Notes: generated from the letters alone by a model not told the origin. A stretch of DNA of 64,000 nt from Convolutriloba macropyga (GCF_964194025.1 NC_134475.1:11408001-11472000); one strand, 5' to 3'. Shown: positions 4,784-64,000, counted from the stretch's first letter. Numbers and translations: made by a program.

Positions 4784-4811
4784 AGGGGTTCTGAATCACA
4801 GGACAACTGCT

Positions 4812-7055
4812 TCACAAAGCTCCTATGCCGATCGTTACTTCTGCTGTTTTAAATGAGTGTTCACCGTGAAGTGAAGCTAGGTGTAGGGTTATGTCTTTCG
4901 GTTGTTGCACTTGAAGTGCATCAGCAAACTTCTTTGTTGTTTGAGTGATGTCACTGCCACTGTCCAACAAAGCGTAGGTTTCAATGCAAAGATCTGTGTT
5001 GAAAAGTGTTACTCGTATCGCCTGCAATTGTATCTGCGGTCTGATCCATGAAGTTTCCTGTTGGTTGCTGCAAGTGTAGTTTTGTTGCGGAGTAGTTGCC
5101 TGCTGTTGGGCTATAGTGCGTTTATTGTTACTCTGCTGTCTGTTGACGTTGTTCTGCGCGTTCATCGGCTGAGGATGAAAACCGATTTTGTTCCAGTTGC
5201 CCCTGTGTGAAGTGCTGCTGTTAGATCCACTTTGCCTGTTCTCGTTTCCACTCTGTTGGTTGTAGTTTGAACTCAACTGCTGCCTTTGGTTTTCATTATT
5301 ACAGTTACGTCCATAGCTTGACTGGTTTTGGTTTGTTTGGTTTCTGAAGACATTGTTTTGTGAGTTTTGATTCCAGTAACCAATTGGTTGTGCATTTTGT
5401 TGCTGTTGCCTTGCATCTGTCTTATGGAGCGTTGAGTGATGAAAGACATCGCATCTGTCCACAAGGCACCTTGTTTTCGATTGGCAGAGACCCTTTTCGT
5501 GAGCTCTTAGACAGTTAGGGCAGAAATTGAACCTCCTCACACAACCCTGTCGGTCAAATACTGACGTTTCCAAGTATTCGGGACAACGACCAAGGTTGTG
5601 GTTTTGTGAGCAGAGTTGACATGAAACATCTGAAGGCCCCCTTCTAGAAAAAGTGTTTACTCTGGTTCTTTGGTTCCGTTGTGGGGAGATGTCTTCGCAC
5701 GCCTCTGCGTATGAGTCAATGCAATCAGCAAAGTGGGTAAGGTTAGGTGGCAGCAAGCCTTGGCTTCTTGTGTGCTGATGCCATCTGATTATCATGTTAG
5801 GGTTCAGTTTGTCTCTGGCCATTCTCAAGACAGCTGAAGACTTCAAATCAGCTTCAAAGTTGTGAAGCCTGAATGTTTGTACCAGTCGCCTCAAGAAAGT
5901 TGAAAAGCTCACAAAAGTGTTTGGTTCGTCCTGTCTGGGTTTCGCCCACTTCTCCAATTGATCCAGGTATGCAGCGACAATGTGCTGTGGTTTGTCAAAC
6001 TTTTTGGTCAGTTCACCGATGGCTTCATGGTAGTAGTCCCCATTGTAGGAGTATCCACTTATGGAACCTCTTGCTTTATGTGTTACAGAGTTTTGGAGGT
6101 ATGTCATTTTTTGGGCGTCTGAGAGGCCACTGTTGTTGTGAATGGTTGCTTTGAAGAAACTGAACCACTGGTGCCATTTCAGAGGATCGCCTGTGAAAAT
6201 ATCATTTGATATCCTGGGCAAACGCAATGTGTTCTGTATCATCAGTGCTTGGTGTTGCATCCAGTCTGGTGGGAAACTCGGAAAGCCATTGTATAGGTTG
6301 TTGTTATAGCCGTTGTTATTGAGTCCATCAGGTCCACTGAAATTGTTCACTGTTAGTTGATTGGTTTGCGGTGTGTACCAATGGCTCATGGTCGGAGCAG
6401 CCTGGTTATTGTTGTGAAAAGAACATGGTTGTTGCAAATGACCTGCTCTGCTGTCCTCACTCTCATGTCGGCTCTGTCCTTGAACATTGTTCTCTTCTCT
6501 CGATCGTTCATCCGTTCTCAGTGCCCCTGTGAGAAATTCGCGATTTCTTCTTTTATCTTCAATGTTAAGAACGGGTTGAGAATTATCAGGGTCTTCTGAG
6601 TCGGACGAGTCAGCGTTGTTACTTTCCTGATGGTTGCGGCTTGCGAAATGATGTTTCATTGCTCTATTGCGTAAAGGGTACTTTCTCAATAGATTAGGGG
6701 AAGGCGCTGCTGATGTGTTAAAAGCAGATTCAGTGTCACTTGCATCTGTTCTGTGTGCTTTTGCTCTTTGTTTGAATTTCAGCATGGTTATGTTTCTTTC
6801 GGCAAATTCATTTGCAAATGTTGTCAACTCTTCACTTGTCAGCTGTAGCTTCATGAGTTCATTGCAACTTCTGTCTAACTTCTCTTTTTGAGACCTCAAG
6901 AGTTCCAAAGTTTCACGTAGTGTGCTTAGACCTTCCTTACTGTTGCTTTGTTCTTCGAAGAGGTCTTTTACAGCGTTCCACTCTTTCACTTTCAACTGAA
7001 GTTGTTGCTTTAGGCTGTTCTTTGCTGCTGATGATGCTTTGGACTTGTTTGGCAT
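4812..7055 (-). CDS. BEL/Pao gag-protease ORF (747 aa)
   Basis: Coiled-coil N-terminus, FTGDPLKWHQWFSFF gag domain, three Cys/His knuckles (CQLCSQNHNLGRC, CPNCLRAHEKGLC, CLVDRCDVFHHSTLH), N/Q-rich linker and aspartic protease ALLDSGS. Confidence 0.92.
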   Translation of the reverse strand: MPNKSKASSAAKNSLKQQLQLKVKEWNAVKDLFEEQSNSKEGLSTLRETLELLRSQKEKLDRSCNELMKLQLTSEELTTFANEFAERNITMLKFKQRAKAHRTDASDTESAFNTSAAPSPNLLRKYPLRNRAMKHHFASRNHQESNNADSSDSEDPDNSQPVLNIEDKRRNREFLTGALRTDERSREENNVQGQSRHESEDSRAGHLQQPCSFHNNNQAAPTMSHWYTPQTNQLTVNNFSGPDGLNNNGYNNNLYNGFPSFPPDWMQHQALMIQNTLRLPRISNDIFTGDPLKWHQWFSFFKATIHNNSGLSDAQKMTYLQNSVTHKARGSISGYSYNGDYYHEAIGELTKKFDKPQHIVAAYLDQLEKWAKPRQDEPNTFVSFSTFLRRLVQTFRLHNFEADLKSSAVLRMARDKLNPNMIIRWHQHTRSQGLLPPNLTHFADCIDSYAEACEDISPQRNQRTRVNTFSRRGPSDVSCQLCSQNHNLGRCPEYLETSVFDRQGCVRRFNFCPNCLRAHEKGLCQSKTRCLVDRCDVFHHSTLHKTDARQQQQNAQPIGYWNQNSQNNVFRNQTNQNQSSYGRNCNNENQRQQLSSNYNQQSGNENRQSGSNSSTSHRGNWNKIGFHPQPMNAQNNVNRQQSNNKRTIAQQQATTPQQNYTCSNQQETSWIRPQIQLQAIRVTLFNTDLCIETYALLDSGSDITQTTKKFADALQVQQPKDITLHLASLHGEHSFKTAEVTIGIGAL

Positions 7056-27227: not shown

Positions 27228-29300
27228 GTAGTAGTAGTTGTTCTAAAAGAGTCAATTTCAAAACAAGATATCATTTAATCCAGGCATCAAGAGAAACTAA
27301 GAGCGACAATTTTTTCAAAAAAATTTTAATGTAAGAGATATCAAAGTTAAAATGAGTAGATTTTGCAACTAGAAAGAAATGTACTTTAGTACGAAATATG
27401 CCCAGCGGCATATTGATCTGAATAACGTTCAACTTCAGCAGTTCCTTTGCACATCTGGTGGCCCCGACTAAAAAAATTACCTTCAGAGCAAATCTTCTGC
27501 GTTTTAGGCACGCTATACAGTTTAGGAGTCAATGACTTCGTGTTGTAAAAACTCTTTTGTACTTCACCTCGGCTTGTTCATTGATCGTTTTCCCAAGCAG
27601 CACCATGTCCAAACTTATCTACTTGTAGCAAACTGGAAAGAAAGTCTCTGAAGTCCAGAGACATAATTGCGATCAGAAATAATCCATCTGAAAACTCTTG
27701 CTTGAAATTCATCTAGCTTGCGCATATACGTTACTGAAGTTTGCCATGCAGAACAAGTAAAGAAGGACGGACAGAACGAGGCTTGGATAGAGTAAAAGTT
27801 TTCTCTTTGCTGAGATCGTGAAATGCACGTTTCGCTTGATGAAAAATATTTTTTGCATTTAGTTAGTTTTGTATCAGTATGACGCTGCCAGCTCAAATTA
27901 CTCAATATGATGAACCCAAAGTCTTCAATGAAGTCAATGTAATCTTGTGCTGTCTCACCAAGTTTTAGCACTTGCGATGAAACGTAAATTTTTACATTTA
28001 GACGGATGAAAACGGAGTGCAATTTAAAATTGACGACAGATGTAAGGCAATAAAGTCTTGTTGTATAAGTTGTGAATTGCCACATGTGTAAATTTTTAAA
28101 TCATCAGCGTAAAGAAAATAAGATAAATGTAAGATTACAATTGGCATATCATTGATAAATAACAGAAAAAGAAGTGGTCCTAGGACACTGCCTTGTGGTA
28201 CACCAGATGTCACATTCCAGAAAAGAGAGAAAGTGTCATTCACTTTAACGCACTGTAAGCGATCAGAAAGATAAGACTCAAAAATTACCATAAAACCAGA
28301 ACATAAGCCAAGAACTTGAAGATCAGACAGCAGTAGGTGATGAGGCACATTATCAAAGGCCTTCCTGTTGTCAAAATAAACAGAAAGTGCAGGAGAGCTA
28401 TTGTCTTGATATTTATAAACATTATCTAAGTAATCAATCATTTGAGTTACGGTTCTCCGCAGTTTCACGAATCCGTGTTGCTGTTTGCAAACGAAAAACT
28501 TCACCTTTGGATAAAGAAAATCGAACAAAATACGTTCGAATACCAATGAATGTTTACATAAAATATCTATTGGACGACAGTTTTCAACCATGTCAAGTGG
28601 TACCGTTTTGTGTAAGGGCGCAATATACGATATATTCCGTAAAAAAGGCCAAGTGCATTTTTTGTAACCCAATAAAAGAGTTTTTGAACGGCTGGAGATA
28701 AAATAGCCGCACACTCACAAGGAACGAATGAGGGAATATTATCAGCTCTCATGCAGCTAGAATCATCAAAGCGCAATATTAAGTTTCTTATATCTCTTTC
28801 TGAAAATGTTATGTTGTCTATACACAACTCTGGCAAACATTCATAAGAGCCTGGCAAATCGTATTTAAATTTGGGACAAAAAACGGAACCAAAGAAAGTA
28901 TTGAAACCATTTGCGATCTCAGAAGACAGAGACACTCCGCTATAAGACATAACAGAATAAAAGACTTACTAAAGCCAAGCGTTCGCAGCAGCCTAAAAAG
29001 GTTAGAGGAGAATGAAAGAATGAACTTTGCAAAAACAATTTGCTTGTCCAATTCAGTAGACTCATTAAAAGATTTATTAAGTTCTCTTTGTTTTAGCGAG
29101 AGCGAAAGTGTCCAGTTTTTTGTAAGCTTACGGAGGTTAGCCTCTTCTTGATTCAAGAGATGCATTGTTTGCGAGGAGAAAAATATTGGCGCATTACGTC
29201 GCTTAGCTCTTTTCATTTTAAGGTTGCCGAACGGTTTTTGAGAATCTACATTTTCAACAAACTGGGGCCTACTTTAATCTACTGAAAGATTTTAATGGTT
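27228..29300 (-). mobile_element. Third CR1-group LINE, degenerate ORF2
   Basis: ENCRPIDIL, QHGF, DNRKAFD, TSGVPQGSVLGPLLFLLFIND and LYADDLKIY motifs; (TAC)n tail near 27228. Confidence 0.88.
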
Positions 29301-35604: not shown

Positions 35605-38600
35605 TGTGATGTTTTTGATTAAAACATGTGAAGTTATGAAACCAGAGTTTAAATGTGCTAAGTGTCAAATGCCTAAGTTCCCCCTATAAAATCAAAAATT
35701 CCCCAGTCTGAGTCGAGCAAGTTTCAAAGGTCCTTTTTTGACCCTAGGATACGCCAGAAATGTTTATGCTCTCCGGTCTAAGTCTTGCATACCAAGACAA
35801 CTTTTCATTAATATTTTTATTTCTGAAAGTCGCAACCATAGTAGCAAATCAAGCTCTATAAGTACATCATAATTCGCGCCATTGGCACACAAGTTATGGC
35901 TAAAAACGGGAAATCCCTTACTATAAATAATATTGAAAGTGAATGTCAACCACTTCTGACTTCTTCAATAAAATCAACCTAAATAAATAGCTTCAAATAG
36001 CTGGAAATAGGTTGGGGGAGTGGAAATCAGGAAATGAATGGGTTTTGGAGGACGAAAGTGTAGGTGGGGGGAGGAAAATGAGGGTGTGGGGGGAGATAAA
36101 ATATAAAGGAACTTGGTTTCTTTACACTCCCGGCACAAAAAAGGCAACATTTGAAATGAAAATGTAAACAATAAAACAAAGCACAAAATTTTTTTTTTGA
36201 TATTGAGTTTTTTTAATTTGTTTGTGTGTGTGTGTGTTTCTATGAACTTGTTTTTGTGACCCTCCCGCGCACTTGACAATTGCGGGAATACACGGCTTAG
36301 GGTTACTGCTGGTCTCTGTACCATTTCTGTAGACGTCTGGATGTCGAAGCTCCTGGCTATTCCGACTGAAGCTCTGTGTGCTTTCGCAATCCTCCCGAGA
36401 GGCCAGATGCCTCTGAGTGTAAAGTCCTTGAGCACCCACACAATATCACCTTCATCCAGTTGTTCATCATTTGATCTTTGCCACTTCGTTCTCTTGTTCA
36501 GCTCAGGAATATATTCCTTCAGCAACCTGCTCCAGTAGTGATCAAGTAGTGTCTGCGTCAACTTGAAATCCTTAGTGGAGAACCGCTGGCTGCTGTTCAC
36601 AAGAGGTTTCAAACACATGTAAGGTCTGCGAAGGAGGAAGTGATTCGGAGTGAGTGGTCCCTCATCTGAGATGCTGCAGCTCACATGAGTTAATGGTCTG
36701 GAGTTCAAAATTGCCTCGGCCTCTGCCACAACTGTCTGGAAAACTGAGAGTGTTAGTTTCCGACTGCCCAGCACTATTAGCAGACTCCTCTTCGCGGTCT
36801 GTATCAGCCTCTCCCAGATTCCTCCAAAGTGTGGTGCCAATGGAGTGTTGAATGTTCTGTTGAGCCAATTGCAGTCTGATGTACTCGTTGTCTGGCTTGT
36901 AGCTTCTCTGGAACTTAAACCTCATTGCTGATGTACTCGTTGTCTGGCTTGTAGCTTCTCTGGAACTTAAACCTCATTGCTTGTTTGGCTCCAATGAAGT
37001 TTTTGCCATTGTCACTCACAATGAGGTCGGGGTATCCACGTCGTGATACAAATCTGCGGATGGTCATGAGAAGACAATCGGTTGAGAGGTCATGGCACAT
37101 TTCTAGGTGGACAGCTCTTGTGACCAGGCATGTGAACAAGCAAACGTAGTGCATCTGCGTGCCCTCTCTCTTTTCCTAAATGTAGAATGGTCCAAACATG
37201 TCCATTCCTGTGTTGACGAAGGGATACTGCTTGTTCGCATCTGGAAATCTGAATTCAGGAAGATCGGCCATCTTCGGTCTCACATTGTCTGCCCTCCATC
37301 GTCTGCAAATGAAACAGTATTTCCCGATACTTCTCAGCGCCTTTCTCAACCCAATCATCAGGAAAATCTGTTGCAGGTGAGCCTTCACATATTCCACGCC
37401 CTGATGGCCACAGTCATGGGGCGCCTTTTCAATCAACAGTCTTGCAATTTTGCTCCTGCTATGGAGAGCAAGAGGATTTTTTGCACTGTAGGTTAGAGGT
37501 GCCCTGTCGAGTCTTCCTCCTAACCTCAAGAGTCCGTCGTCATCTAGAAAGGGAGTGAAGGGCATCAGCTTGTCTCCTTTCTCAAGATTGTCTCCCTTTA
37601 ACAGTGCAAAAGTTGTTCCTGAGAACAGCTCGTTTTCGGACATTTTAATGAGGTAGTTCCTTGCCCTTTTCTCATCTGATGCAAAACTGTCATTGTTGGA
37701 GGTCTCAGGTGATTCATTTTGTCTTCTAGTTCGGACTTTTGCTTTGAAGCGTCCTATTGCCTGGAACACCATTCTAGTAGAGTTGAGTAGTCGGCTCCAT
37801 GTTGAAAATTTTTCAACCTCAACGACTGGCGTCTGAAGTGGTGTCGCTTGTGTAGCGCATATGTGGGGATCACTGTCTTCGGCAAAAATCCAGGAGTCTT
37901 GAGGTGTGCTTAGAAAGTCCGGTGGTTGAAGCCACAGCTTTTGCATGTCTGATGGGTTGAGGCCTCGTGTGCCGTGGTCAGTGGGATTCATCTTTCCAGG
38001 GATGTGTCTCCAATTGTCCGGGTTGGATTTCTGATGAATTTAGTCAATCTGTTGGCAATATACATCTTCTGTCTCTGCTTGGATTGGATCCATCCAAGTG
38101 TAGCGGTGCTGACTGTCCAAGAGTGTTTTGAACTTATGGTTAATGTCATCTCGCTCTCACAAAATCCAGCTAGCTTTGCTCCAAGTGTCGCCGCTTCCAA
38201 TTCCAGTTTTGGAATGCTCAGCTGCTTGATCGGCGCCACTTTTGTTTTACTGATCACATATCGGGATGTGGAAGATCCATCAACTTTAGTTGTCCTCACA
38301 TAAACTATGGCAGCAATTGCACTCATTGAGGCGTCAGTGAACGTGTGAAGTTGATGGGTTCCATTGGTGCTGGGAATCAAGCATCTAGGAATTTCGATTG
38401 AAGTCATGCTGTCGAACTCATCCATCCAATCCTGTAGTTCCTGTTGGTAGCATTCCGACACAGGTTGATCCCAGTTTCTTCCCTCTTTAATGATTCTTTG
38501 GAGAATGCATCTAATTCTGATGGCAAAAGGTGAAATCAGTCCGACTGGATCGAACAGAGAAGCTGCCATTGAAAGCACCTTTCTTTGAGTCATCTGGTGT

Positions 38601-41600
38601 CCTGTGTAGAGAAGCTTCGGTTTTGCAAACATCAACTTGTCAGTTTTGGGGTCCCATGTCTGACCAAAGATTCTTTGGGCTTTCATTTCCGCCTTGTCTT
38701 CTTCCAGTAGGTTACTTAATGCGTCTGGTCTGTTGCTCAGGAACTTTGTCAGATTGAATCCTCCTGTATGCACAACAGTTTTGATCTCATCTACACTTCT
38801 GCTGGCCTCTTCTTCAGAAGGGGAGGTCTGCATGAAATCATCCATGTAGAACTGCTGCATTATTGATGTGTAGGCCTCTGGATGTTCTTGTTGGTGGTCA
38901 TTTGCACACTTCTGCAGAACAGAAATCGCTTAAGAAGGTGAGCATGTAGCTCCAAAAATGAGTCGATTGTATTTGAAGATCTTTTCCTTGCCATTCTGTG
39001 TCCACAGAAAACGGAGATAGTCCTGGTCTTGTGGTTGGATGCCAATCTGCATGAACATTGCCTCAATGTCAGCTGTGATTGCCATTGAGTACTGTCTGAA
39101 GCGGAGAAGAAGGCCATGCAGGTTGCAGAGTAGATGCGGCCCTTTCAGCAGTGCATCATTGAGTGAGGTACCCTCATATTTGGAAGCAGTATTTGTGACT
39201 CTGCGGATTTTATCTGGTTTCTGTTTGTTGATCACTGGGTGATGGTGAAGGTAACAGACAGAGTGTCTGCAACTGGGGTCTGCAGTTTAGATGTAGTTTT
39301 TGTCCAAATCTTTTTTGATGGTTTCGTCGTAGCGTTCTCTCAAATTTGTGTCCCTCTCCAGTCTTTGCTGCAGAGCGTGCCACTGAACTTTGGCCATGAA
39401 GTAGTTGTTAGGAAGTTTGATGTCTTTCTTCCATGGAAGTCCAATCTGGTATCTGTCACCAATGTGTTTTATGGTATCATTGAGGATGAACAGAGCTTCT
39501 TTGTCATCTGCAGACTGTCCCTTTGAAGAACACTGGTTGAAGTTCACACCTTCAATTGTCCAGAAAAGTTGGAGAAGATCTTCATCTGGTTCGTCTTGTC
39601 GTCTCCTGATATGATTGAAAAGTGTTATGCTTGTGCTGTTTGAATGTCCGACCCCCTTCTATGTGTACCTCTGAGGAATGGGTCCTGTCAGTGTCCAGCC
39701 AAGCAGAGTGTTGACTCCGTATGGGGTGCCAGTGGGTCCTGTTGTGAACTGTCTGGAAACCGTTGCTGTGAAAGCATCTGCTCCAATCAAAATTCCGATC
39801 CGGTTGTCTCTGATTGTTGGAAATCTTATGTTCTGGAGGTGAGAGTGGTCTCTGCAGATCTCATTCAGCATTTCAATTTGAACTCTTGGCATTCGAAACT
39901 TCTCCACTGTTGTTGCGTACACAGGGATCTGATCACAGGACAACTGCTTCACAAAGCTCCTATGCCGATCATTACATCTGCTGTTTTAACTGAGTGTTCA
40001 CCGTGAAGTGAAGCTAGGTGTAGGGTTATGTCTTTCGGTTGTTGAACTTGAAGTGCTTCAGCAACCTTCTGTGTTATTTGAGTGTTGTCATTGCCACTGT
40101 CCAACAAAGCGTAGGTTTCAATGCAAAGATCTCTGTTGAAAAGTGTTACTGGTATCGCCTGCAATTGTATCTGCGGTCTGATCCATGAAGTTTCCTGTTG
40201 GTTGCTGCAAGTGTAATTTTGTTGCGGAGTAGTTGCCTGCTGTTGGGCTATAGTGCGTTTATTGTTACTCTACTGTCTGTTGACGTTGTTCTGCGCGTTC
40301 ATCGGCTGAGGATGAAAACCGATTTTGTTCCAGTTGCCCCTGTGTGAAGTGCTGCTGTTAGATGCACTTTGCCTGTTCTGGTTTCCACTCTGTTGGTTGT
40401 AGTTTGAACTCAACTGCTGCCTTTGGTTTTCATTATTAAAGTTACGTCCATAGCTTGACTGGTTTTGGTTTGTTTGGTTTCTGAAGACATTGTTTTGTGA
40501 GTTTTGATTCCAGTGACCAATTGGTTGTACATTTTGTTACTGTTGCCTTGCATCTGTCCTATGGAGCGTTGAGTGATGAAAGCCATCGCATCTGTCCACA
40601 AGGCACCTTGTTTTCGATTGGCAGAGACCCTTTTCGTGAGCTCTTAGACAGTTAGGGCAGAGATTGAACCTCCTCACACAACCCTGTCGGTCAAACACTG
40701 AGTTTTCCAAGTATTCGGGACAACGACCAAGGTTGTGGTTTTGTGAGCAGAGTTGACATGAAACATCTGAAGGCCCCCTTCTAGAAAAAGTGTTTACTCT
40801 GGTTCTTTGGTTCCGTTGTGGGGAGATGTCTGCGCACGCCTCTGCGTATGAGTCAATCCAATCGGCAAAGTGGGTAAGGTTAGGTGGCAGCAATCCTTGG
40901 CTTCTTGTGTGCTGATTCCATCTGATTATCATATTAGGGTTCAGTTTGTCTCTGGCCATTCTCAAGACAGCTGAAGACTTCAAATCAGCTTCAAAGATGT
41001 GAAGCCTGAATGCTTGTACCAGTCGCCTCAAGAAAGATGAAAAGCTCACAAAAGTGTTTGGTTCGTCCTGTCTGGTTTTCGCCCTTCTCTCCAATTGATC
41101 CAGGTATGCAGCGACAATGTGCTGTGGTTTGCCAAACTTTCTGGTCAGTTCAGCGATGGCTGCATTGTAGTAGTCCTCATTGTAGGAGTATCCACTTATG
41201 GAATCTCTTGCTTTATGTGTTACAGAGTTTTGGAGGAATGTCATTTTTTGGGCGTCTGAGAGGCGACTGTTGTTGTGAATGGTTGCTTTGAAGAAGCTGA
41301 ACCACTGGTGTCAATCCAGAGTATCGCCTGGGAAATTATCAATTGATATCCTGGGCAAACTCAATGTGTTCTGTATCATCAGTGCTTGGTGTTGCATCCA
41401 GTCTGGTGGGAATCTCGGAAAGCCATTGTATAGGTTGTTGTTATAGCCGTTGTTATTGAGTCCATCAGGTCCACTGAAATTGTTCACTGGTAGTTGATTG
41501 GTTTGCGGTGTGTACCTATGGCTCATGGTCGGAGCAGCCTGGTTATTGTTGTGAAAAGAACATGGTTGTTGCAAATGACATGCTTTGCTGTCCTCACTCT

Positions 41601-43461
41601 CATGTCGGCTCTGTCCTTGAACATTGTTCTCTTCTCTCGATCGTTCATCCGTTCTCAGTTCCCCTGTGAAAATTTCGCGGTTTCTTCTTCTCTCTTCAAT
41701 GTTCAGAACGGGTTGAGAATTATCAGGGTCTTCTGAGTCGGACGAGTCAGCGTTGTTACTTTCCTGATTGTTGCGGCTTGCGAAATGATGTTTCATTGCT
41801 CTATTGCGTAAAGGGTACTTTCTCAATAGATTAGGGGAAGGCGCTGCTGATGTGTTAAAAGCAGATTCAGTGTCCCTTGCATCTGTTCTGTGTGCTTTTG
41901 CTCTCTGTTTGCATTTCAGCATGGTTATGTTTCTTTCGGCAGATTCATTGGCAAATGTTGTCAACTCTTCACTTGTCAGCTGTAGCTTCATGAGTTCATT
42001 GCAACTTCTGTCTAACTGCTCTTTTTGAGACCTCAAGAGTTCCAAAGTTTCACGTAGTAGGCTTAGACCTTCGTTACTATTACTTTGTTCTTCGAAGAGG
42101 TCTTTTACTGCGTTCGACTCTATCACTTTCAACTGAAGTTGTTGCTTTAGGCTGTTCTTTGCTGCTGATGATGCTTTGGACTTGTCTGGCATATTGATTG
42201 TTTTAGAAGTTTATTCTTATTTTACAAAGTTTATACTGCACTGTTACTGCACTATGTTTCCTTGTAACAGCCCTGTTCTATCTTTTGTTATGTCAAAACC
42301 TAATGTTAAATGTTAATTTAAATGAGGCTGTTGCTTAGTGTGCTTAGCTAATGTTTTTTTGCCTAATGTTTGTTAGCTATGTTTTAGCGTGTCGCAATCA
42401 CTAATCAGTGAAGTTTGATGAAGCTTCGTTAATAAGTTGTATAGAGTAAAACCTTTTCACTAATCAGTGAAATTCTTACAAACGTAGACAATTATAATTT
42501 TTTGTCCGGTTGCCTATTTGTTTTTCGAGCGCGATAGAAAGAACCCTAACCTGTGGCTAAATTTCGACTAAGGTGTGTGTCTACTGACACTGGTGGGGGG
42601 ATAACTTCACGTTCCTTTAAACCTTAATGAAGCAAGGGCATACCAGGCCTTGCAACTAATCCTAAGTTAATGTGTGTGTGTTAGTGGTGCTTTCAAATTT
42701 CACCTAGAGGAGGACCTACTCCTTTCAGAACTAATGCGGAAAGATACTATATTGATGCAACGATATCTAGACGCCTATTAAAATCCAACTTTCGAAATGA
42801 AGACTTTCAATTCTGCAAGTAAGGCTAGCCCATCTGTCGTGACTAGGCATCCCACGCAAGCATCCTTCTCAGGAGAACTGTCAAATCAGTCTTCACTTCT
42901 AGAGCCAGATTAAAAATCAGTTGGATCTTTTGTGGTTGTGATATTTTTGATTAAAACATGTGAAGTTATCAAACCAGAGTTTAAAAGTGCTAAGTGTCAA
43001 ATGCCTAAGTTCCCCCTATAAAATCAAAAGTTCCCCAGTCTGAGTCGAGCAAGTTTCAAAGGTCCTTTTTTGACCCTAGGATACGCCAGAAATGTTTATG
43101 CTCTTCGGCCTAAGTCTTGCATACCAAGACCACTTTTCATTAATATTTGTATTTCTGAAAGTCGCAACCATGGTAGCAAATCAAGCTCTATAAGTACATC
43201 ATAATTCGCGCCATTGGCACACAAGTTGTGGTTAAAAACGGGAAATCCCTTACTATAAATAATATTGAAAGTGAATGTCAACCACTTCTGACTTCTTCAA
43301 TAAAATCAACTTGAATAAATAGCTTCAAATAGCTGGAAATAGGTTGGGGGAGTGGAAATCAGGAAATGAATGGGGGAAATTTGGAGGACGAAAGTGTAGG
43401 TGGGGGGAGGAAAATGAGGGTGTGGGGGAGATAAAATATAAAGGAACTTGGTTCCTTTACA
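35605..43461 (-). mobile_element. BEL/Pao LTR retrotransposon copy 2 (defective)
   Basis: LTRs at 35605-36126 and 42937-43461. gag is split (41311-42192, 40537-41244); protease ALLDSG; RT YMDD; RNase H FTDAS; integrase core CLVTRAVHLE...VSDNGKNF is retained; 51-bp internal tandem duplication at ~36876-36978. Confidence 0.95.
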
Positions 43462-49473: not shown

Positions 49474-49716
49474 TCAATGCATCAGTTTTCGCGCGTAAAC
49501 CAAAGCCACCCGACAAAAAAAGTGGGCAAGTTGGAAAACTATTAACACACTCCAGCCGAGCCAGAGACCCAAACTGCCTCCGAAGTCGCTCAAAAGAGAC
49601 GAGATGTCGTAGGCTGGTGTCTCCCATATCCTCTCAAATGTGATGTGTTCGTAAAAGACTTCAACTCGGGCAAAGTTGCGCCTTATTTTCTGAATGATAT
49701 TCTCATTTGTCAAGTT
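49474..49716 (-). CDS. DEG/ENaC channel exon encoding pre-TM2 and TM2 (probably the last coding exon)
   Basis: NFARVEVFYEHITFERIWETPAYDISSLLSDFGGSLGLWLGWSVLIVFQL is the DEG/ENaC TM2 signature. Acceptor aaacag at 49717-49718, phase 0. Confidence 0.92.
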   Translation of the reverse strand, partial: NLTNENIIQKIRRNFARVEVFYEHITFERIWETPAYDISSLLSDFGGSLGLWLGWSVLIVFQLAHFFCRVALVYARKLMH

Positions 49717-49899
49717 CTGTTTAATTTAGGGAAATTTCACCACCTAATGTTGACATATTAGAACAAACTAGAGCAAAACTGAAGTGTGCGTGAAGTGCGT
49801 TAAAAACGGCGAAGTCTTTCCAATTCATAATAAAATTAAGTTTCGATCTTTCATTTTTTCGTAGTAACATTTTTAATAAAACTGTCCAAAGCAATGCTC

Positions 49900-50600
49900 T
49901 CTAATTTTAATAGAGATAAAATATTAGAATCTGCTACAAATTTTTCTTACTGACTTCTTCTTATGTCGATGTCTCTTCCTACATAAAGTTTACCAAAAAT
50001 TCCTCAGAATTTTAAATATACGACTCAATAATATCAAAGAGATGGTGTATAAGTGCTTTCGCGCATATAGTTCAAACTTTTCACGTAAATGGATACTCAG
50101 ATAAACAGAAAATAGCCATCATCAAAACTCAAGCATCAATATGAAAAATGCATATTCAAAAAGCACTAACTGTTTTTTAATAAAAGTCAGGAACAGCGAG
50201 TAAAAAACAGCAAGGACTGCAGTTCGCAAAACTAAGACAATTAATATGAAAAAACTTCTAAATCAGTTCTGTCAAAGCCATTAAATTTAAAAGGTAGGGG
50301 TTATTGACGACGAGGAACTGACTAAAGCTGTGTTTCAATAGAAAACTCGTTGATAAATATTGACAAACAAATCAACCGAAAAAAACGGACACCACTTAAA
50401 GTCTATTCATTTCTGATAATAGGCGATGTCAACGAGATCAAAATCGGTACCTGCCAACAAAAGTGAAACCTGCCAGGAAAAATGGCAAGAAAAGCTCTTT
50501 TATTTTCTGAATAACTGATGTCAAAGATCTTTATATTCACTAATTATATCCTAAAACCAACTATATTCAAAACACTGTACAAATTAATAAAAAAAAGATT
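49900..50600 (+). mobile_element. Possible very decayed Penelope-like remnant inside the DEG/ENaC intron
   Basis: Only short fragments resemble PLE C-terminal regions (NGYSDK, ILKPTI). There is no intact ORF. Confidence 0.25.
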
Positions 50601-52095
50601 GCACCATTTAATAACAGCAAGAAAAGACCTAGTATAAAAATCAGGTAATTCAATTTTCTCTAAAATAAAGTTTGCAGTCGTAAAAAAAATCAATAGTTGT
50701 GTGCTGATACTTTAAAGAAACTAAATCAATCAATACAACAACAAATTTGACATATTTGGATGCATTTATTAGAATATAAAAAAATATTAAAAATGTGTTT
50801 TTTGTGGTAACATGTAAAAATTTCCTTATATTGTAATTAAAATAATCTTTGTCGAAGTCATGAAAAAACAGCTTCTTCTGGCACTTATTATTATCAATCT
50901 TCAGGTTAAGCTCGCCAGAATTTACTCTAGAGCCTTGATAAATTTATTAAAAGAAAACAGAAATGAATGTGGAACCATGAGCAATTTTGTCAAGGTTCAT
51001 TTGGCGGTAATACATATGTGACGTTATTTGAAAGCAATGAATAGTCTATGCATTTTTATTGTTCGTTTAGTCAATTTTGAAAACATTTTGATTAAAAAAC
51101 GTTTTAAGAAAATTCTTAAATCCGCAGGCAAAATGAAAAAGAAAGAGAAATTTCTGTAAATTACTTTTTTACAATTTGTTTTAGTTTTTCTCAGCAGTTT
51201 GTGTGACGAGCTTCTCCATTCGTCTAAACATTTTTCTCAGCATTTTGCCCCTCAACTTTATGGTTCTTCAGTATATGCTTTCAAAATTAAATAGTTTTTA
51301 ATCCTCTTGGATGGTTCCACGCAAATGATGTAAAATTTATGATGAGCTGGATGAAAAAAAAACCTTGACTGAAAAAATAAATTTTTTTTTGCACTGGTCT
51401 TCCTGGAATAAACGTTTACTCATAAATTTTTGCAAAATAATTTACTCGCAAAAATAATCATTTCGTTTTTTTTAAACAATTGAATACTCAAATTGCTGGA
51501 GAGCCCATAAGAGTGTTACTTTTATTTATTTATTACTGTCATTAAAAGATTCTAGACCCACGATTCTAGGCCTTATAAAAGATATGTTACGTTATGATAT
51601 GTTGTTAATGGATAATAGCTCATAGTTTGACATAATTCAATATAAAATTCCAGTAAATCCAAAGCTGTTACAGCTGTTCACCGAAGATTCAAAATTATGA
51701 CTTCTTCCGTCTGAGCATAGGAACTGCTGTGATATTGTCATATAAATACATAGCGCATTTCGATGAAAAAGGAGTTGAGACAACCCAGGTCGAGGTCCCG
51801 GCCGAGGTAACCTCTGAAAGACTAGTGTGCGCTCGATACTCATTGTGCGCGCCTGATCAGACGAGTTCCAGACCGAAATGACCTCTGAACAGACAAGTAT
51901 CACAAGTATTGTCCAGACTAGGATCGAAGCTTTTTCCAGGCCATGTAATTGGAGCGCACTGTGAACATGTGGGCGCTCGAAGATTTCCCAATCAGAGGTC
52001 ACTTCGGTCTGGGCACCTTGAAGTGGGTAGGATTTGGAACTAATTTTCACTCTGCATGAAAATGAAAATTGAAAGTAGATAATGGTGAAAATTCC

Positions 52096-52467
52096 CTTAG
52101 CCGTCAAGACACTCTTCAAATAAGACTGAACCTTAGTCGATTTAGATCGCTCAAGCAATCTGTTCACGACAAATGGCGCGTAAGTCTCACCCGGCCACTC
52201 AGTCAAAGATTGTTGCGTCGTGAACATAACTGACGTGCATGGGTGCGGGCACGGACAGTCCAAGAGCCCGTTTTGAGACTTGAACTCGACGTTTATTCTA
52301 CAGTTGCGCTGAATTGGGTCAAAATTGTCGCAGAATCTGAGAGAGGCGTTGTTGATGGAGGAATCGGTGCTGTAGAACTGGTCATAGCTGTCTATACATC
52401 CGCATGTTCTGGCCAGATCGTTCAATCGGCAGAAATAGAGGCAATCTTCTCTGTTGTAAACTGGGCT
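52096..52467 (-). CDS. DEG/ENaC channel exon, Cys-rich thumb domain
   Basis: YNREDCLYFC...TCGC...FC...NC...DCPCPHPC...SLTEWP. Acceptor ttttttgtcag at 52468. The donor position is inferred (see findings). Confidence 0.88.
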
Positions 52468-52911
52468 CTGACAAAAAAGGCAAAAGGGCACATCTTTTCT
52501 GCTAATTTTACAATTAGTTGAATTATTGGGCGCTGTCTTTTTGAAGATTTGTCACACATTTTTGAAGTCAAACTTTGGTGGTTATTTTAGTCACACTGGA
52601 GAGCAAAAAAACGAGTAATTTAAGGCGTGAAATTTTTTAGCTTCATTTCTATAGCAGAGATGGAATACTGTTTGAAATAATATTCTGGTTTTAATAGAGA
52701 TTTTTGTACCAGATGCGGCATTTTAACTACTTCTCCGTTTTTTTTAAAAAAAAATTTGATCAGGTTTTGATTTGTATGGCTTCCAAAGTCCATTCCTGGT
52801 AATTTTAAAGTTTTTTTTGGTTTAATAACTGAAAATTCTTTAAGTTGTATGTCGCTGGGATTTCTATACCCCGATCTCTTTACCTTTGGCAACAGAAAAG
52901 ATGTCCCTTGC

Positions 52912-53114
52912 CTTGGCTATGGCCGCACGGTTCAAATGCAAGCCTTGTGGCCATTCAGTTGTACAGTTGCCATATTTGCCTCCTTTTCGGACAATTTCCT
53001 TCTTCTGCAATGCCATAAATGCGGCAGAGCCAGGGCTCACTGGCGAACCTTTCGTGAACATATCTGGATAGATTGATGGAAAATGTTTGGCCACAATGGC
53101 CGCTGGAAACGAAG
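52912..53114 (-). CDS. DEG/ENaC channel exon, palm/beta-ball
   Basis: AAIVAKHFPSIYPDMFTKGSPVSPGSAAFMALQKKEIVRKGGKYGNCT resembles ENaC GARVMVH...[30 protein letters not shown]. Acceptor tttacag at 53115. Confidence 0.85.
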
Positions 53115-53879
53115 CTGTAAATTGGATCACGAACTGCTTCTTTTCAACTGAAGCGAGCATTTCAGTTTGATCTTTACTTTTCAAGTTCGTAAGGTTACGT
53201 AACTATGTTACGTAACTTTACGTACATAGGTTACGTAACTCTGATGAAGTTACTGAAGAAATGTGGCATTAGTCGAGAACCGCGTAGCCTTAAGAGATAT
53301 TAGTCAGAATTTCGGAGTGATTTTAGCGAAGATCTTGCTTAAAACACGAACTTTGCTGGTTTTAAAATCTCGCACTGTAAGTAAGAGAATTTGACAATCC
53401 TGAATTGATCACTGCATCTTGATCTGGTATTTTGAAGTGTGCATTGTCATATTTCAAATCCTATTACTAAATTTCTGTAAAAATATAGAAAACTTTGATT
53501 TATAAACACATGATTCAAGATCTTGCATTTCTTGAATTACTACCTAAATTTTTATTTCTATGGGCTATCGTTAAGGCAAAATGCAAATTTCTTTCAAAAA
53601 TAGGACGCTTGCAAGTTATTTTCAAATTTTGCGACAAATGGCTGTTGCATATTTTGCAAATAAATATATTATGCATTAAATAGATCGCCTTGGTGAAAAA
53701 TAAATGGCAAATGTTTCATCAAAAAATTCCACTAGGGGAATTTATGGTTCAAAGATTTAGAAAGCCAAAATTAGAATACATTGCTTAGGCTGAAAAAAAT
53801 AATCGAATAATTTTTATATTTAAAAAACCTGTTTTTCAGATTGTTCAAGGTTATGGTGCAAATTGAAAAGAAGCAATTC

Positions 53880-54524
53880 CTGTCATTCCAATGTACTCGT
53901 CAACGTCCAAAAACAGGGTTAGTTTCAACCCATAATTCACCCCCGGTTTCTTGGCAATTCTACTCTGGAACGGCTCTATCCAGCTCTGATCAGAGTTAAA
54001 ACTAAAACAGTTGCCAAACACCGGGTCCTGAAACTGGAAAAAGTCAGTATGGTCACAGTTCTTCCCATTGTATGAGCACTGGGCGATAAAGTCCTGACCT
54101 TGGGTTCCATAAGCTTCAATGACATTCAGGTCAAATCTCAAATATTCGCGAAGATCCGATAAATCGTTCAAACTTGACGTGTTGTATAGTTGATAGTAAT
54201 TTAGAGAATCGATAATAAGATCGTTCTGCAAGACTTGATTGATTTCAGTGGTCAGTTTTTCAAGTAGGAAACTCGAATTGCACCCAAAAACTAAATCTTC
54301 GTCAAAACCCAAATCGCATTCGGTCACGCCGTTGCAAGGTAGAGCACAGGTTTGTTGACCAGGACAGGTGATAGCTGGCCAGATACAGTTGCCCTGGATT
54401 GTGGTTATGTTTTCATTCCTTTTCAGGTTGATTTCGGTGCAATTTAAGGTCGGATGGGTTTCGTCGCTTTTGTCGTCACAGTTGAATTGTGAATCACATA
54501 CCCAGTCATACGGAATGCACAATT
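53880..54524 (-). CDS. DEG/ENaC channel exon with two LDL-receptor class A modules followed by the conserved extracellular core; no upstream exons recognised within the window
   Basis: CIPYDWVCDSQFNCDDKSDE and CALPCNGVTECDLGFDE (LDLa); FIAQCSYNGKNC, FGNCFSFN and GVNYGLKLTLFLDVDEY (DEG/ENaC). Acceptor gttttag at 54525, phase 1. Confidence 0.9.
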
Positions 54525-55599
54525 CTAAAACATAAATGGTTTCTTCAAGCAACTGGCGATGAGGTCAACGACCCAAGAAAAGCGAGACAGGGGGGTTTGG
54601 GGCTTGGGTCGCTGACAGGGGGGTTCGGGGCTATTATGAGCTCATCTAGTCTGGACAAAATTTTAGTCGCGTTGCTCCGCCTGGCCGTTTGTTCCAATTA
54701 CCCAACTGATTTTTCTAATCTTTTAATTTTTAAAAAATTGTTCCCTTTTTTATATGGCCAATTTTTTGTCAGATATTTTCTTGTCTATCCACTTTTCAAG
54801 AGATTTTTCAACGTTTTCCATATTTTTCTCTCGCTAAATTGTAGTCCCTCAGAATTTCAAGTTGCTAAACTGAAGAGGCGGCAGTTTAGCTCTAAAATTG
54901 TGATAGAGTGAGCCAAAAATTATTTCATTCTCCGATTTAAATCTTATAGTATTGCAAAATTAGCAAATGGAGCAGGAAACAACACGGAGCCAACCATTGC
55001 TGGGTAAGGAAACAAAGTTTGCCTCCGTAGAAGATTTTGAGGTGATACATTGGTACCTACTTCGCTGTACTTAAAACGAGATAGTCCTCAAAAAGCTAAA
55101 ATTATATTGACATAAAATGCATTGACGGAGATTTACCAGTATATGCCATCTTTGTATTTCAATTAGATAGCGCACAAAAGATTTTATAGTCACCAGAAAT
55201 GCTGCAATTGTATCTCTATAGAAAACGCTGCTGATGGATGAAAGAAACATTTGTACATTTTAATTGAATGGCGTTGTCAGAATCGTTGAAAGACAGAATC
55301 GGATATAACCATTTCAAAAAAATTCCATGAAGTTTTACAGGCAGCGAGCTTCAAAACGATACCCCAAAAAATTAATGTGGAATATTGATAATTCAATGAA
55401 CAATTGAAAATTTGCGGAAAAATTACAGTTAGCATACAAATTCACATTATATTTCTAATGTGGGAACAAAACATCATGTGAACACACTATATTATTCCCA
55501 TTCCTCATTGTGCTAAAAATGCTTTAACCGAAACACTGCGCTTTTAAACGGCGAAAACCTTTCTCCTCTAAATAATACATACGCAGATTGATTGAAAAC

Positions 55600-63100: not shown

Positions 63101-64000
63101 TCAAAGTCTTTTGATTCTATAAACCACAAAATACTGTTACGGAGACTTGAAAAAAAATAGGTTTTGACGAACACGCTACCAATTTAATAGAGAATTATTT
63201 GAGTGAAAGAACGCAGAGAGTTGTTCTGAATGGAATTAAATCAGATATTATCCATTCCTTTCAGTTGTTCTGAATGGAATGGATAAATTTGAAAAGAAGA
63301 GCTCCACAAGGTACTATTTTAGGACCTCTATTATTTAACATTTACGTCAACGGTTTAGCAAAGAATGTAGAAAAGGATTGCACGGTCGTACAGTACGCAG
63401 GCGACATTTTTCTTTTTACATCGGACACTGATGAAATATCGTCAAAAACAAAACTTGAACATAACATCTCAAAAATTATTGACTTTTTTGCTAAGTCCCA
63501 GTTAGTAGTGAACAAACAAAAAACAGAATATATTGTGTTCAGCACCAGGAAGAGGTTAACAAATACTGTTCTAAATGTCGAAAATGAAAGAATAGCAGAA
63601 TCCAATAGTGTGAAGTATCTTGCCGTAATTTTTGATAGCAAACTAAAATTTGATGGAGAAGTGAAAAAGATTCTTCAGAGAATGGCTTGTGGAAAAAAAG
63701 TTTCGAATACACTAAGTAAAAGTTTACCAGAGAAAACGAAAGTCTTATTATTTATTGCAATAGTAATAAGTCATCTACATTATTCCGCTCTAATTCTGAT
63801 ATAGTTGCAAAAGTCATTACTCACAACTTTAGAAAAACATCTGAATTGGGGAATAAAATCCATTTTTAATAGAAAATACGATCGGTCTACAGATCTCAAA
63901 CTTCGGAACAAAATACTACCAGTTTTTTTCTCTTGAAATACCATTGCTCAAAATATATTTTCTCGCTTACTCAGCAACGACCTTCCAGTATATAAAATTG
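60180..64000 (+). mobile_element. L2/CR1-group LINE with SGNH-esterase ORF1 and EN-RT ORF2, disrupted, running off the window
   Basis: ORF1: IGSSII, VILQDGTNA, DDIHFN. ORF2: LLKSSGIEINPG, HQNARSL, ETW, GGGI, GGDYNLN, TLIDYI, TDHF, QFGYRK, LDLSKSFDSINH, PQGTILGPLLF and YAGD. Confidence 0.9.

What the first reader, a model, noticed from the sequence alone, without database searches (positions are those of the whole stretch)
49717..53879. Candidate structure-guided splicing system: three consecutive introns with non-canonical donors (GA, GC, GG) whose 5' ends pair with a sequence just upstream of the 3' AG
Seen: joining the DEG/ENaC exons in frame places introns at 53879-53115 (CAG|GAA...AG, 765 nt), 52911-52468 (AAG|GCA...AG, 444 nt) and 52095-49717 (AAG|GGA...AG, 2379 nt). 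In each, an inverted repeat starts at intron +1 and its partner ends 16, ~12 and 13 nt before the acceptor. The three stems share no sequence, so they are not one transposon's TIR. Six of seven substitutions between arms give G-U pairs on the transcribed (minus) strand and would be A-C mismatches on the other strand, as expected for selection on RNA structure. All donors fit AG|GNA. Established: GA/GG donors occur in a few animals (Oikopleura, the copepod Eurytemora), and end-pairing defines euglenid nonconventional introns. Inference: an intron-specific stem brings the two splice sites together and compensates for a weak U1 match. I know of no description of this combination in an animal protein-coding gene, but I cannot search the literature.
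Basis: partly seen in the sequence, partly recalled or inferred. Interest (0 to 1): 0.95.

Follow-up and report, generated by a model that had tools for sequence, protein, structure and literature searches.

The report
Hairpin-closed non-GT introns in an acoel
Three introns of an ion-channel gene in the acoel worm Convolutriloba macropyga start with GA, GC or GG instead of GT and have ends that pair into a strong stem; they belong to a wider class in this genome that most likely arose from transposon insertions, and no RNA data could be obtained to show the splicing.

Summary
The genome is Convolutriloba macropyga, an acoel. Intronless paralogs align without gaps across all three junctions of the DEG/ENaC gene. 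That fixes the introns at 53879-53115 (GA-AG), 52911-52468 (GC-AG) and 52095-49717 (GG-AG).

In each intron a stem starts at +1 and ends 16, 12 or 13 nt before the AG (-27.9, -29.2 and -18.4 kcal/mol).

The same architecture occurs in the single-copy genes RPE and INTS4, in another paralog, and in a related acoel. Seven non-GT introns fold at -14 to -30 kcal/mol. Nineteen GT introns fold at -3.5 to -16 (p = 8.5e-5).

The claim that the stems are not transposon repeats fails for intron 1. With the last exon G, its arm is a variant of a 16-mer terminal repeat found 55 times in the genome (0 in controls). The INTS4 intron carries that repeat itself. Some introns also show duplications resembling target sites.

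The closest known cases are the transposon-derived, hairpin-ended non-canonical introns of Fritillaria and Amoebophrya.

All seven sequencing runs served were DNA, so splicing and any role of the stem remain inferred. The NCBI model uses the GC intron exactly, uses a GT donor 36 nt upstream for intron 3, and does not cross intron 1.

Other first-stage notes of this scan report the same class elsewhere in this genome.

The parts
53880..54526 (-). Upstream coding exon (LDLa-like modules plus DEG/ENaC finger region). It ends ...EYIGMT with CAG before the GA donor. The acceptor at about 54526 is putative.
   Evidence: Translation, ORF, alignment to paralogs.
53115..53879 (-). Intron 1, GA-AG, 765 nt, phase 1.
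   Evidence: No in-frame GT/GC alternative was seen by eye, and the NCBI model starts downstream of it.
53861..53879 (-). Intron 1 5' arm (19 nt). With exon base 53880 it reads GGAATTGCTTCTTTTC, a variant of a genome-wide TIR.
   Evidence: I9; the hit at C8:11461865-11461880 corresponds to window 53865-53880.
53131..53149 (-). Intron 1 3' arm. It ends 16 nt before the acceptor.
53226..53368 (-). Dispersed repeat nested in intron 1 (intron positions 512-654), 72-84% identical to other copies. It does not include the arms.
52912..53114 (-). Coding exon (...ASFPAAIVAKH...NRAAIAK).
52468..52911 (-). Intron 2, GC-AG, 444 nt, phase 0. The NCBI protein model uses exactly this junction.
   Evidence..AAIAK|SPVYN...
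52890..52911 (-). Intron 2 5' arm (about 22 nt). It is unique in the genome.
   Evidence: 9 matches against 6 in the control.
52480..52504 (-). Intron 2 3' arm (two bulges). It ends 12 nt before the acceptor.
52506..52853 (-). MITE copy nested between the arms of intron 2, 33% diverged (K2P 0.44) from the consensus of seven other copies of its family. Without it the intron would be about 95 nt.
52096..52467 (-). Coding exon (SPVYNRED...KSVLTAK).
49717..52095 (-). Intron 3, GG-AG, 2379 nt, phase 0. Rival donor: a GT 36 nt upstream (intron 49717-52131), used by the NCBI model.
   Evidence: The 12 residues VQSYLKSVLTAK that the GT donor would remove align to conserved residues in the paralogs.
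52081..52095 (-). Intron 3 5' arm (13-15 nt, one U-U mismatch).
49730..49745 (-). Intron 3 3' arm. It ends 13 nt before the acceptor.
49474..49716 (-). Last coding exon (NLTNENI...GGSLGLWLGWS...KLMH, then stop).

Best explanation
The three intervening sequences are genuine introns of one DEG/ENaC paralog of the acoel Convolutriloba macropyga, and they are absent from the paralogs compared. They belong to a class of introns, seen at several loci in this genome, bounded by AG|G(N)A ... AG. In this class the first 12-22 nt pair with a segment that ends 6-16 nt upstream of the acceptor.

The arms are most likely the terminal inverted repeats of DNA elements whose insertion into exons created the introns. 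That would make them 'introner'-type or MITE-derived introns.

Inferred, not shown: in the pre-mRNA the arms form a helix that loops out the interior and puts the two splice sites 6-16 nt apart. This would help a spliceosome that tolerates any base at +2 to define introns with a poor U1 match. Selection then keeps the helix after the element has decayed.

Shown here: the borders (by homology), the stems, their link with non-GT donors, the repeated TIR for intron 1 and for INTS4 intron 2, and the absence of the RPE and INTS4 introns from two related acoels.

Not shown here: transcription, the junctions in RNA, the branch point, or any effect of the helix.
For: 1. Borders are fixed without reference to the stems.
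- Paralogs are colinear across all three junctions.
- Orthologs in two relatives are colinear across the RPE and INTS4 intron-2 sites.

2. Stems.
- Seven non-GT introns give -14.3 to -29.9 kcal/mol, all paired from +1.
- Nineteen GT introns give -3.5 to -15.7 kcal/mol. Mann-Whitney p = 8.5e-5. The null from mismatched end pairs is -7.6 +/- 3.2.
- The two strongest GT stems belong to weak donors, GTTGGT and GTGATG.

3. The introns must be removed. RPE and INTS4 are single-copy and each is interrupted by a GG-AG stem-closed intron.

4. Transposon origin.
- The INTS4 intron-2 arm occurs 129 times against 3 in the control.
- Exact GGAAYTGTTTCCTTTC occurs 55 times against 0.
- The intron-1 variant GGAAYTGCTTCTTTTC occurs 10 times against 0, including a 272-bp element with two TIRs.
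- Direct repeats: CAGGAGC, 7 of 7, flanks the stem in paralogs L012/L013. GACTTTAG/GCTTTTAG, 6 of 8, flanks INTS4 intron 2.
- The RPE and INTS4 introns are absent from relatives L068 and L070.
- A related acoel has its own GC-AG intron with a 13-bp stem.

5. Hints that the arms are under selection.
- Between two haplotype-level copies (own sequence and L067), the RPE intron differs at about 75 of 508 alignment columns, yet its first 23 and last 29 nt are identical.
- The arms are identical between L012 and L013 while the intron interior has diverged.
- Intron 2 keeps its stem around a MITE copy that is 33% diverged.
- G-U to A-C in the stems is 11:1.

6. The NCBI model uses the GC-AG borders of intron 2 exactly.
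Against: - No RNA evidence. All seven runs are DNA, with flat depth and no splice joints.
- For intron 3 an in-frame GT donor exists and is the annotated one.
- The arms of introns 2 and 3 show no repeat family (one search is uninformative because of a satellite).
- The interiors of the RPE and INTS4 introns are unique in the genome, which is unusual for MITEs.
- Target-site duplications are clear in only two cases.
- A helix that covers the 5' splice site would be expected to hinder U1 and U6 access.
- The link between non-GT donors and stems could simply follow from the TIR supplying the first intron bases, with no function.
- The G-U excess falls to 4:1 (p = 0.19) if G-U pairs at the inner helix ends are dropped.
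- A nested old repeat does not date the intron if the element carried it in when it inserted.
Confidence: 0.58

Rival explanations
1. An intron-specific stem evolved in place, by selection on RNA structure, to rescue weak GA/GC/GG donors. The stems have nothing to do with transposons.
For: - The arms of introns 2 and 3 are not detectably repeated.
- The intron interiors are unique.
- The stems go with donor weakness.
- There is a G-U excess on the transcribed strand.
Against: - The arms of intron 1 and of INTS4 intron 2 are copies of a repeated TIR.
- Direct repeats flank some stems.
- An intron gained with a weak donor would have needed the stem from the start.
Confidence: 0.12
2. The stems are neutral leftovers. 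The spliceosome of this lineage accepts G followed by any base at +2, as in Eurytemora and Oikopleura, and removes these insertions by ordinary signals (AG|G.A, branch site, AG). The TIR helix plays no part and is simply young.
For: - The donors fit the Eurytemora rule of an obligate AG| and A at +3 (PMC5714493).
- The TIR family is repeated, and most of its copies are not preceded by AG (9 of 55).
- The RPE and INTS4 introns are absent from the relatives.
Against: - The arms stay intact while the interiors diverge.
- The stem of intron 2 survives around a MITE copy that is 33% diverged.
- G-U exceeds A-C.
- The spacer to the AG is confined to 6-16 nt in all seven introns.
Confidence: 0.22
3. 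This locus is not processed as proposed. Either the gene is an untranscribed or decaying paralog, or intron 3 uses the annotated GT donor 36 nt upstream, so that the GG arm lies inside the intron.
For: - The NCBI model P0122 uses the GT donor and is truncated at the N-terminus.
- The family has more than 40 paralogs.
- No RNA run held these exons.
Against: - All four exons keep open frames and the family's conserved residues.
- The GT donor would delete 12 residues that align to conserved positions in the paralogs.
- The same intron type sits in the single-copy genes RPE and INTS4.
- Standard gene-model pipelines generally accept only GT, GC and AT donors (general knowledge, not checked for this annotation). 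Non-GT donors compromised automated models in Eurytemora (PMC5714493). The model therefore does not count against GA or GG use.
Confidence: 0.12
4. Removal is not spliceosomal. The options are a euglenid-like nonconventional pathway or an endonuclease plus ligase that recognises the helix, or excision at the DNA level as for ciliate internal eliminated sequences.
For: - The helix buries the 5' splice site and the region where the polypyrimidine tract and branch site normally lie.
- Euglenid nonconventional introns also pair their ends and show repeats resembling target-site duplications (PMC11282704).
Against: - G at +1, A at +3, AG| before the donor and AG at the 3' end are kept in all seven introns, and these are spliceosomal signatures.
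- CTAAT- or CTGAA-like branch motifs lie just upstream of the 3' arms (read by eye).
- Whole-animal DNA contigs run straight through the introns with no deletion joints, which argues against DNA excision.
Confidence: 0.05

Closest known systems
MITE-derived non-canonical introns of the larvacean Fritillaria borealis (Henriet et al. 2019, as summarised in PMC11282704; follow-up PMC13326754)
   Same: An animal genome in which lineage-specific, non-GT introns carry terminal inverted repeats and target-site duplications, and are thought to be removed by an adapted major spliceosome.
   Different: - In Fritillaria the borders are mostly AG-AC or AG-AT and 95% of introns are non-canonical. Here G at +1 and AG at the 3' end are kept, and ordinary GT-AG introns are common (9 of 9 resolved in the myosin gene).
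- The stems here are long (12-22 bp) and start at +1.
- The host is an acoel, not a tunicate.
- Splicing was shown by RNA in Fritillaria, not here.
Hairpin-forming introner elements of the dinoflagellate Amoebophrya (Farhat et al. 2021, PMC7789003)
   Same: - Non-canonical introns with 8-20 nt inverted repeats at the two ends, predicted to form a hairpin that joins the exon borders.
- Short direct repeats at the borders.
- Only a minority of the elements could be assigned to MITE families.
   Different: A protist with no detectable U1 snRNA and highly variable borders. Here the borders are G..AG.
GA and GG donors of the copepod Eurytemora affinis (Robertson 2017, PMC5714493) and G*-AG introns of Oikopleura
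   Same: AG| is obligate before the donor, A sits at +3, the introns are lineage-specific, and automated gene models are broken by them.
   Different: No end-pairing or TIR is reported there. The paper states that no nearby consensus was noticed. Only 13 intron bases per donor are published, so I could not test pairing.
Euglenid nonconventional introns (PMC11282704; PMC12501133)
   Same: The intron ends base-pair and bring the exons together. Repeats resembling target-site duplications are present, and a transposon origin is proposed.
   Different: Euglenid pairing is short (typically +4 to +6 with -8 to -6). The borders lack G..AG, there is no polypyrimidine tract, and excision yields circles by an unknown, probably non-spliceosomal route.
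Intron helices in yeast that shorten the distance from the 5' splice site to the branch point (from my own knowledge, e.g. the RP51B intron; not looked up here)
   Same: Intramolecular pairing within an intron that promotes spliceosome assembly.
   Different: Those helices lie downstream of the 5' splice site and upstream of the branch point. They do not include +1, and the donors are canonical.

Membership tests
Introner / MITE-derived introns | Terminal inverted repeats at the intron ends | tested here: met
   All seven non-GT introns have them: -14 to -30 kcal/mol, paired from +1.
Introner / MITE-derived introns | The intron sequence belongs to a multi-copy family | tested here: inconclusive
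   - The TIR is repeated: the 19-mer occurs 129 times against 3, the exact 16-mer 55 times against 0, and the intron-1 variant 10 times against 0.
- The interiors of the INTS4 and RPE introns are unique.
- The arm of intron 2 is unique.
Introner / MITE-derived introns | Target-site duplication at the borders | tested here: inconclusive
   CAGGAGC, 7 of 7, in L012/L013. 6 of 8 in INTS4 intron 2. 6 of 8 by eye for intron 1 (AATGACAG against ATTTACAG). Nothing convincing for introns 2 and 3.
Introner / MITE-derived introns | Lineage-specific positions (recent gain) | tested here: met
   - The three introns are absent from the paralog ORFs compared.
- The RPE and INTS4 introns are absent from two related acoel assemblies.
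- Loss in the relatives instead of gain here is not excluded.
Introner / MITE-derived introns | Removed from the mRNA at the predicted borders | not testable with these tools
   Only DNA runs were served. RNA-seq of specimen txConMacr14 exists (PMC13650328).
Eurytemora/Oikopleura-type G[ACG]-AG introns | AG at the exon end, G at +1, A at +3, AG acceptor | tested here: met
   - CAG|GAA, AAG|GCA, AAG|GGA.
- RPE AAG|GGA, INTS4 TAG|GGA, the relative's intron AAG|GCA.
- In L012 the rule is met only at the border that restores the ancestral reading frame, CAG|GAG. There the stem starts at +5.
Euglenid nonconventional introns | Borders without G..AG, and short pairing of +4 to +6 with -8 to -6 | tested here: not met
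   G..AG is kept. The pairing is 12-22 bp from +1, and the spacer is 6-16 nt.
U12-type (minor spliceosome) introns | 5' splice site /RTATCCTT | tested here: not met
   The intron starts are GAATTGCT, GCAAGGGA, GGAATTTT, GGAACTTT and GGAACTGT. The consensus is from my own knowledge.
U12-type (minor spliceosome) introns | Branch site TCCTTAAC 10-15 nt from the acceptor | tested here: inconclusive
   By eye, TTCCCTAAAT in intron 3 and TTCCCTAGC in the RPE intron sit 11-13 nt from the AG. Nothing similar is seen in intron 2 or INTS4 intron 2.
3'-tailed mirtrons | A compact hairpin of about 60-70 nt that starts at +1, followed by a 3' tail | tested here: not met
   The loops are 400-2300 nt. There is no Rfam match in the window.
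DEG/ENaC channels (Pfam ASC, PF00858) | Match to the family profile and colinearity with family members | tested here: met
   Precomputed PF00858 hit on P0121 and P0122. 41 paralog matches in the genome. Alignment.

The most novel reading that the evidence does not exclude
Acoels have a structure-dependent mode of intron definition. Any insertion that brings a terminal inverted repeat next to an AG|G is recognised through its helix, not through U1 pairing, and is spliced out whatever base stands at +2. TIR transposons that land in exons would then neutralise themselves and become a steady source of new introns, and selection would preserve the helix long after the element is dead.
Probability: 0.33. 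Interest if true: 0.85.

Novelty: new variant of a known kind. Interest (0 to 1): 0.7.

Why it matters
If RNA data confirm the junctions, acoels would join Fritillaria as only the second animal lineage known to me with transposon-derived, hairpin-ended non-canonical introns. Here GT-AG and G[ACG]-AG introns sit side by side in the same genes. That makes a clean comparison possible: what lets a spliceosome accept any base at +2, and does an intron-end helix stand in for U1 recognition?

It also bears on how introns are gained. The RPE and INTS4 introns are absent from two related acoels, and intron positions differ among the three species.

There is a practical side too. These introns break automated gene models. 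The NCBI model of this channel is truncated and lacks 12 residues that are conserved in paralogs.

Tried and rejected
- **RNA evidence.** Both run searches returned only runs of unknown kind. On laying, all proved to be DNA, with flat depth across introns and no splice joints.
- **Eurytemora test.** One published donor 23-mer had no match in the genome. The organism was later identified as C. macropyga through an NCBI protein on the same 68,616,625-base contig and the genome note.
- **Orthologs.** A protein search with exon 3 found nothing. The second search returned only this genome's own copies, and L072 is 99.97% identical to the window. There is therefore no covariation test for the three introns.
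- **Annotation-free scans.** An inverted-repeat census found AG|G before 1% of repeats, as expected by chance. A duplex scan gave 772 hits in real sequence against 771 in reversed sequence. Such stems mean something only when homology fixes the borders.
- **More loci.** The CCT genes and the snRNA genes could therefore not be read.
- **Upstream intron.** A search for a stem partner of the acceptor near 54526 gave only irregular GC-rich duplexes.
- **Other readings.** DNA-level excision, the mirtron reading and the U12-type reading were considered and rejected for the reasons given in the rival explanations and the membership tests. Rfam found nothing in the window.
- **Literature.** Searches for stem-closed GA/GG introns in animals or in acoels found no description.
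Full report
**Where and what.** The window is C8:11408001-11472000 of a 1,175,981,408-base genome. A protein search returned the NCBI protein 'degenerin-like protein asic-1 [Convolutriloba macropyga]' on a contig of 68,616,625 bases, which is the length of C8. The published genome note gives 1,175.98 Mb for this acoel. Most of the window is BEL/Pao and LINE retroelement sequence. The finding lies in a DEG/ENaC gene on the minus strand.

**The observation.** The sequence shows the three proposed introns with the stated borders: CAG|GAA...ACAG|, AAG|GCA...TCAG| and AAG|GGA...ACAG|. The exons translate to DEG/ENaC sequence. The genome holds at least 41 paralogs. Most carry this part of the protein in one continuous ORF. 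A MAFFT alignment of the spliced product with 12 such ORFs has no gap at any of the three junctions. Intron lengths and phases are therefore fixed by homology alone.

The first 24 nt of each intron pair with the segment just upstream of the acceptor at -27.9, -29.2 and -18.4 kcal/mol. Pairing starts at +1, and 16, 12 and 13 nt are left before the AG. End pairs taken from different introns give -7.6 +/- 3.2 kcal/mol, and 0.8% reach -18. The intron-2 stem also forms in the fold of the whole intron.

**The annotated model.** The NCBI protein (242 aa) joins ...AAIAK|SPVYN..., which is exactly the GC-AG intron 2. For intron 3 it uses the same acceptor but a GT donor 36 nt upstream. That removes VQSYLKSVLTAK, a segment that aligns with conserved residues in the paralogs. 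The model begins at MFTKG inside the second exon, so it does not cross the GA intron. This pattern of broken models is what Robertson described for Eurytemora. It leaves the GG donor of intron 3 favoured by homology but unproven.

**RNA.** The four runs found with the locus, and three more found with a housekeeping locus, are all DNA. Depth is flat at 6-96x across exons and introns, and no joint lies at any intron border. These contigs argue against excision at the DNA level. They say nothing about splicing.

**The same architecture elsewhere.** A lead from earlier notes of this scan took me to C8:16.46-16.48 Mb, which I read myself.
- Ribulose-phosphate 3-epimerase (RPE) is split by CCAAG|GGAACTTTTTCAC...GGTTCC, then 14 nt, then AAAG|.
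- INTS4 is split by TTTAG|GGAACTGTTTCCTTTCGCC...GGGGAAAGGAAACAATTCC, then 8 nt, then TTAG|.
- Both genes are single-copy in the genome, so these GG-AG interruptions must be removed if the proteins are to be made.
- Related assemblies with the same DHX-RPE-INTS4 gene order (L068, L070) have uninterrupted coding sequence at both sites.
- One of those relatives has its own GC-AG intron in INTS4, with a 13-bp stem from +1.
- The paralogs L012 and L013 share a stem-closed intron with no GT option.

**Census.** I took only introns whose borders are set by protein colinearity: 7 non-GT introns and 19 GT introns. The GT set comprised nine from a myosin II gene mapped with a 1966-aa reference, INTS4 introns 1 and 3, DHX, two paralog introns and five from the relatives.
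- Non-GT introns give -14.3 to -29.9 kcal/mol. All pair from +1, with spacers of 6-16 nt.
- GT introns give -3.5 to -15.7 kcal/mol, which matches the null.
- Mann-Whitney p = 8.5e-5.
- The two strongest GT stems belong to the weak donors GTTGGT and GTGATG.

**Are the stems transposon ends?**
- The INTS4 and RPE introns have no other copy in the genome.
- The repeats found inside introns 1 and 2 are nested elements that do not include the arms.
- The 19-nt 5' arm of INTS4 intron 2, however, occurs 129 times with up to 2 mismatches against 3 for the reversed control. The hits are split evenly between strands.
- The exact 16-mer GGAAYTGTTTCCTTTC occurs 55 times against 0. Nine of these copies are preceded by AG.
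- The arm of intron 1, read with the last exon G, is GGAATTGCTTCTTTTC. That is the same motif with two changes, present in both of its arms. This variant occurs 10 times against 0, including two inverted copies 272 bp apart on C13. It is therefore a TIR subfamily, not in-place compensation.
- The arm of intron 2 is unique (9 against 6). The search for the arm of intron 3 was swamped by a satellite. By eye, that arm resembles the RPE arm (GGAAYTTTTCAC).
- Direct repeats flank some stems: CAGGAGC twice in L012/L013, and GACTTTAG/GCTTTTAG in INTS4.

This is the anatomy of introner or MITE-derived introns. The review PMC11282704 and Farhat et al. (PMC7789003) describe the same combination of non-canonical borders, inverted repeats at the ends that form a hairpin, and short direct repeats, in Fritillaria borealis and Amoebophrya.

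**Is the helix used?** The evidence is suggestive only.
- Between two haplotype-level copies (own sequence and L067), the RPE intron differs at about 75 of 508 alignment columns. Its first 23 and last 29 nt are identical.
- L012 and L013 have identical arms around a diverged interior.
- Intron 2 keeps a stem of about 22 bp around a MITE copy that is 33% (K2P 0.44) from the consensus of seven other copies, which themselves differ from that consensus by 1-9%.
- G-U pairs outnumber A-C mismatches 11:1 (p = 0.003). The ratio is only 4:1 if G-U pairs at the inner helix ends are set aside.

Each point has an escape. Ordinary splice signals cover part of the conserved ends. An element could have carried an old repeat in with it. 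The link between non-GT donors and stems would also follow if the TIR simply supplies the first intron bases.

**Mechanism proposed.** The borders keep AG|G, A at +3 and a 3' AG. CTAAT- or CTGAA-like motifs lie just upstream of the 3' arms (read by eye). That would put a branch point 20-40 nt from the acceptor. I therefore favour removal by the major spliceosome with relaxed +2 recognition, as inferred for Eurytemora and Fritillaria. The TIR helix would bring the two sites within 6-16 nt of each other and mark the intron. I could not read the snRNA genes.

**Verdict.** Its premise that the stems are not TIRs is wrong for at least intron 1, and animal and protist precedents exist. I found no description of this class in acoels. 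It ranks as a new variant of a known kind, and public RNA-seq could settle it quickly.

Noticed in passing
window 51853-52016 (minus strand, inside intron 3): A high-copy element (summed contig depth 1240-4140 against 28-60 around it). It has itself the shape AAG|GT + 20-bp inverted repeat + 12 nt + CAG| (-39 kcal/mol). If it landed in an exon in this orientation it would look like a ready-made GT-AG intron.
   Followed up: partly
window 51637-52491 (minus strand): The reading frame of the third exon stays open for 153 codons into intron 3, running through the high-copy element. A gene caller reports it as a 284-aa protein (P0121). The extension shows no similarity to the channel family.
   Followed up: partly
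   Followed up: yes
L065:5468-5861 (C8:16470468-16470861, INTS4 intron 1): A palindromic repeat of extreme copy number (summed depth up to 83,780 against about 60) nested in a canonical GT-AG intron.
   Followed up: no
L068 and L070 against C8:16455001-16485000: Intron positions differ widely among three syntenic acoel assemblies. The DHX intron sits 12 codons apart in two species. One relative has three extra INTS4 introns. RPE is intronless in both relatives. This points to rapid intron turnover in the group.
   Followed up: partly
C4:60263733-60282426 and C5:18199364-18210938 (own genome): Long tandem arrays with a period of about 889 bp that contain ACGGAATTTTCTCCATTA. They turned up as background in the pattern search for the arm of intron 3.
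   Followed up: no
C6:35240786, C9:40441724, C5:75033746 against C10:40824077-40838996 and others: Several CCT/TCP-1 chaperonin genes are intronless while others have 6-8 introns. The intronless ones could be retrocopies that record the splice junctions of their parents.
   Followed up: no
window 53185-53239: A cluster of overlapping palindromes built on GTTACGTAAC inside intron 1, next to or partly overlapping the dispersed repeat at 53226-53368.
   Followed up: no
window 1916-7055 and 35974-42192: Two BEL/Pao-type retroelement copies (Peptidase_A17, RVT_1, DUF1759, DUF5641) with long open frames. LINE-type reverse transcriptase ORFs lie at 27998-28714 and 63274-63804.
   Followed up: no
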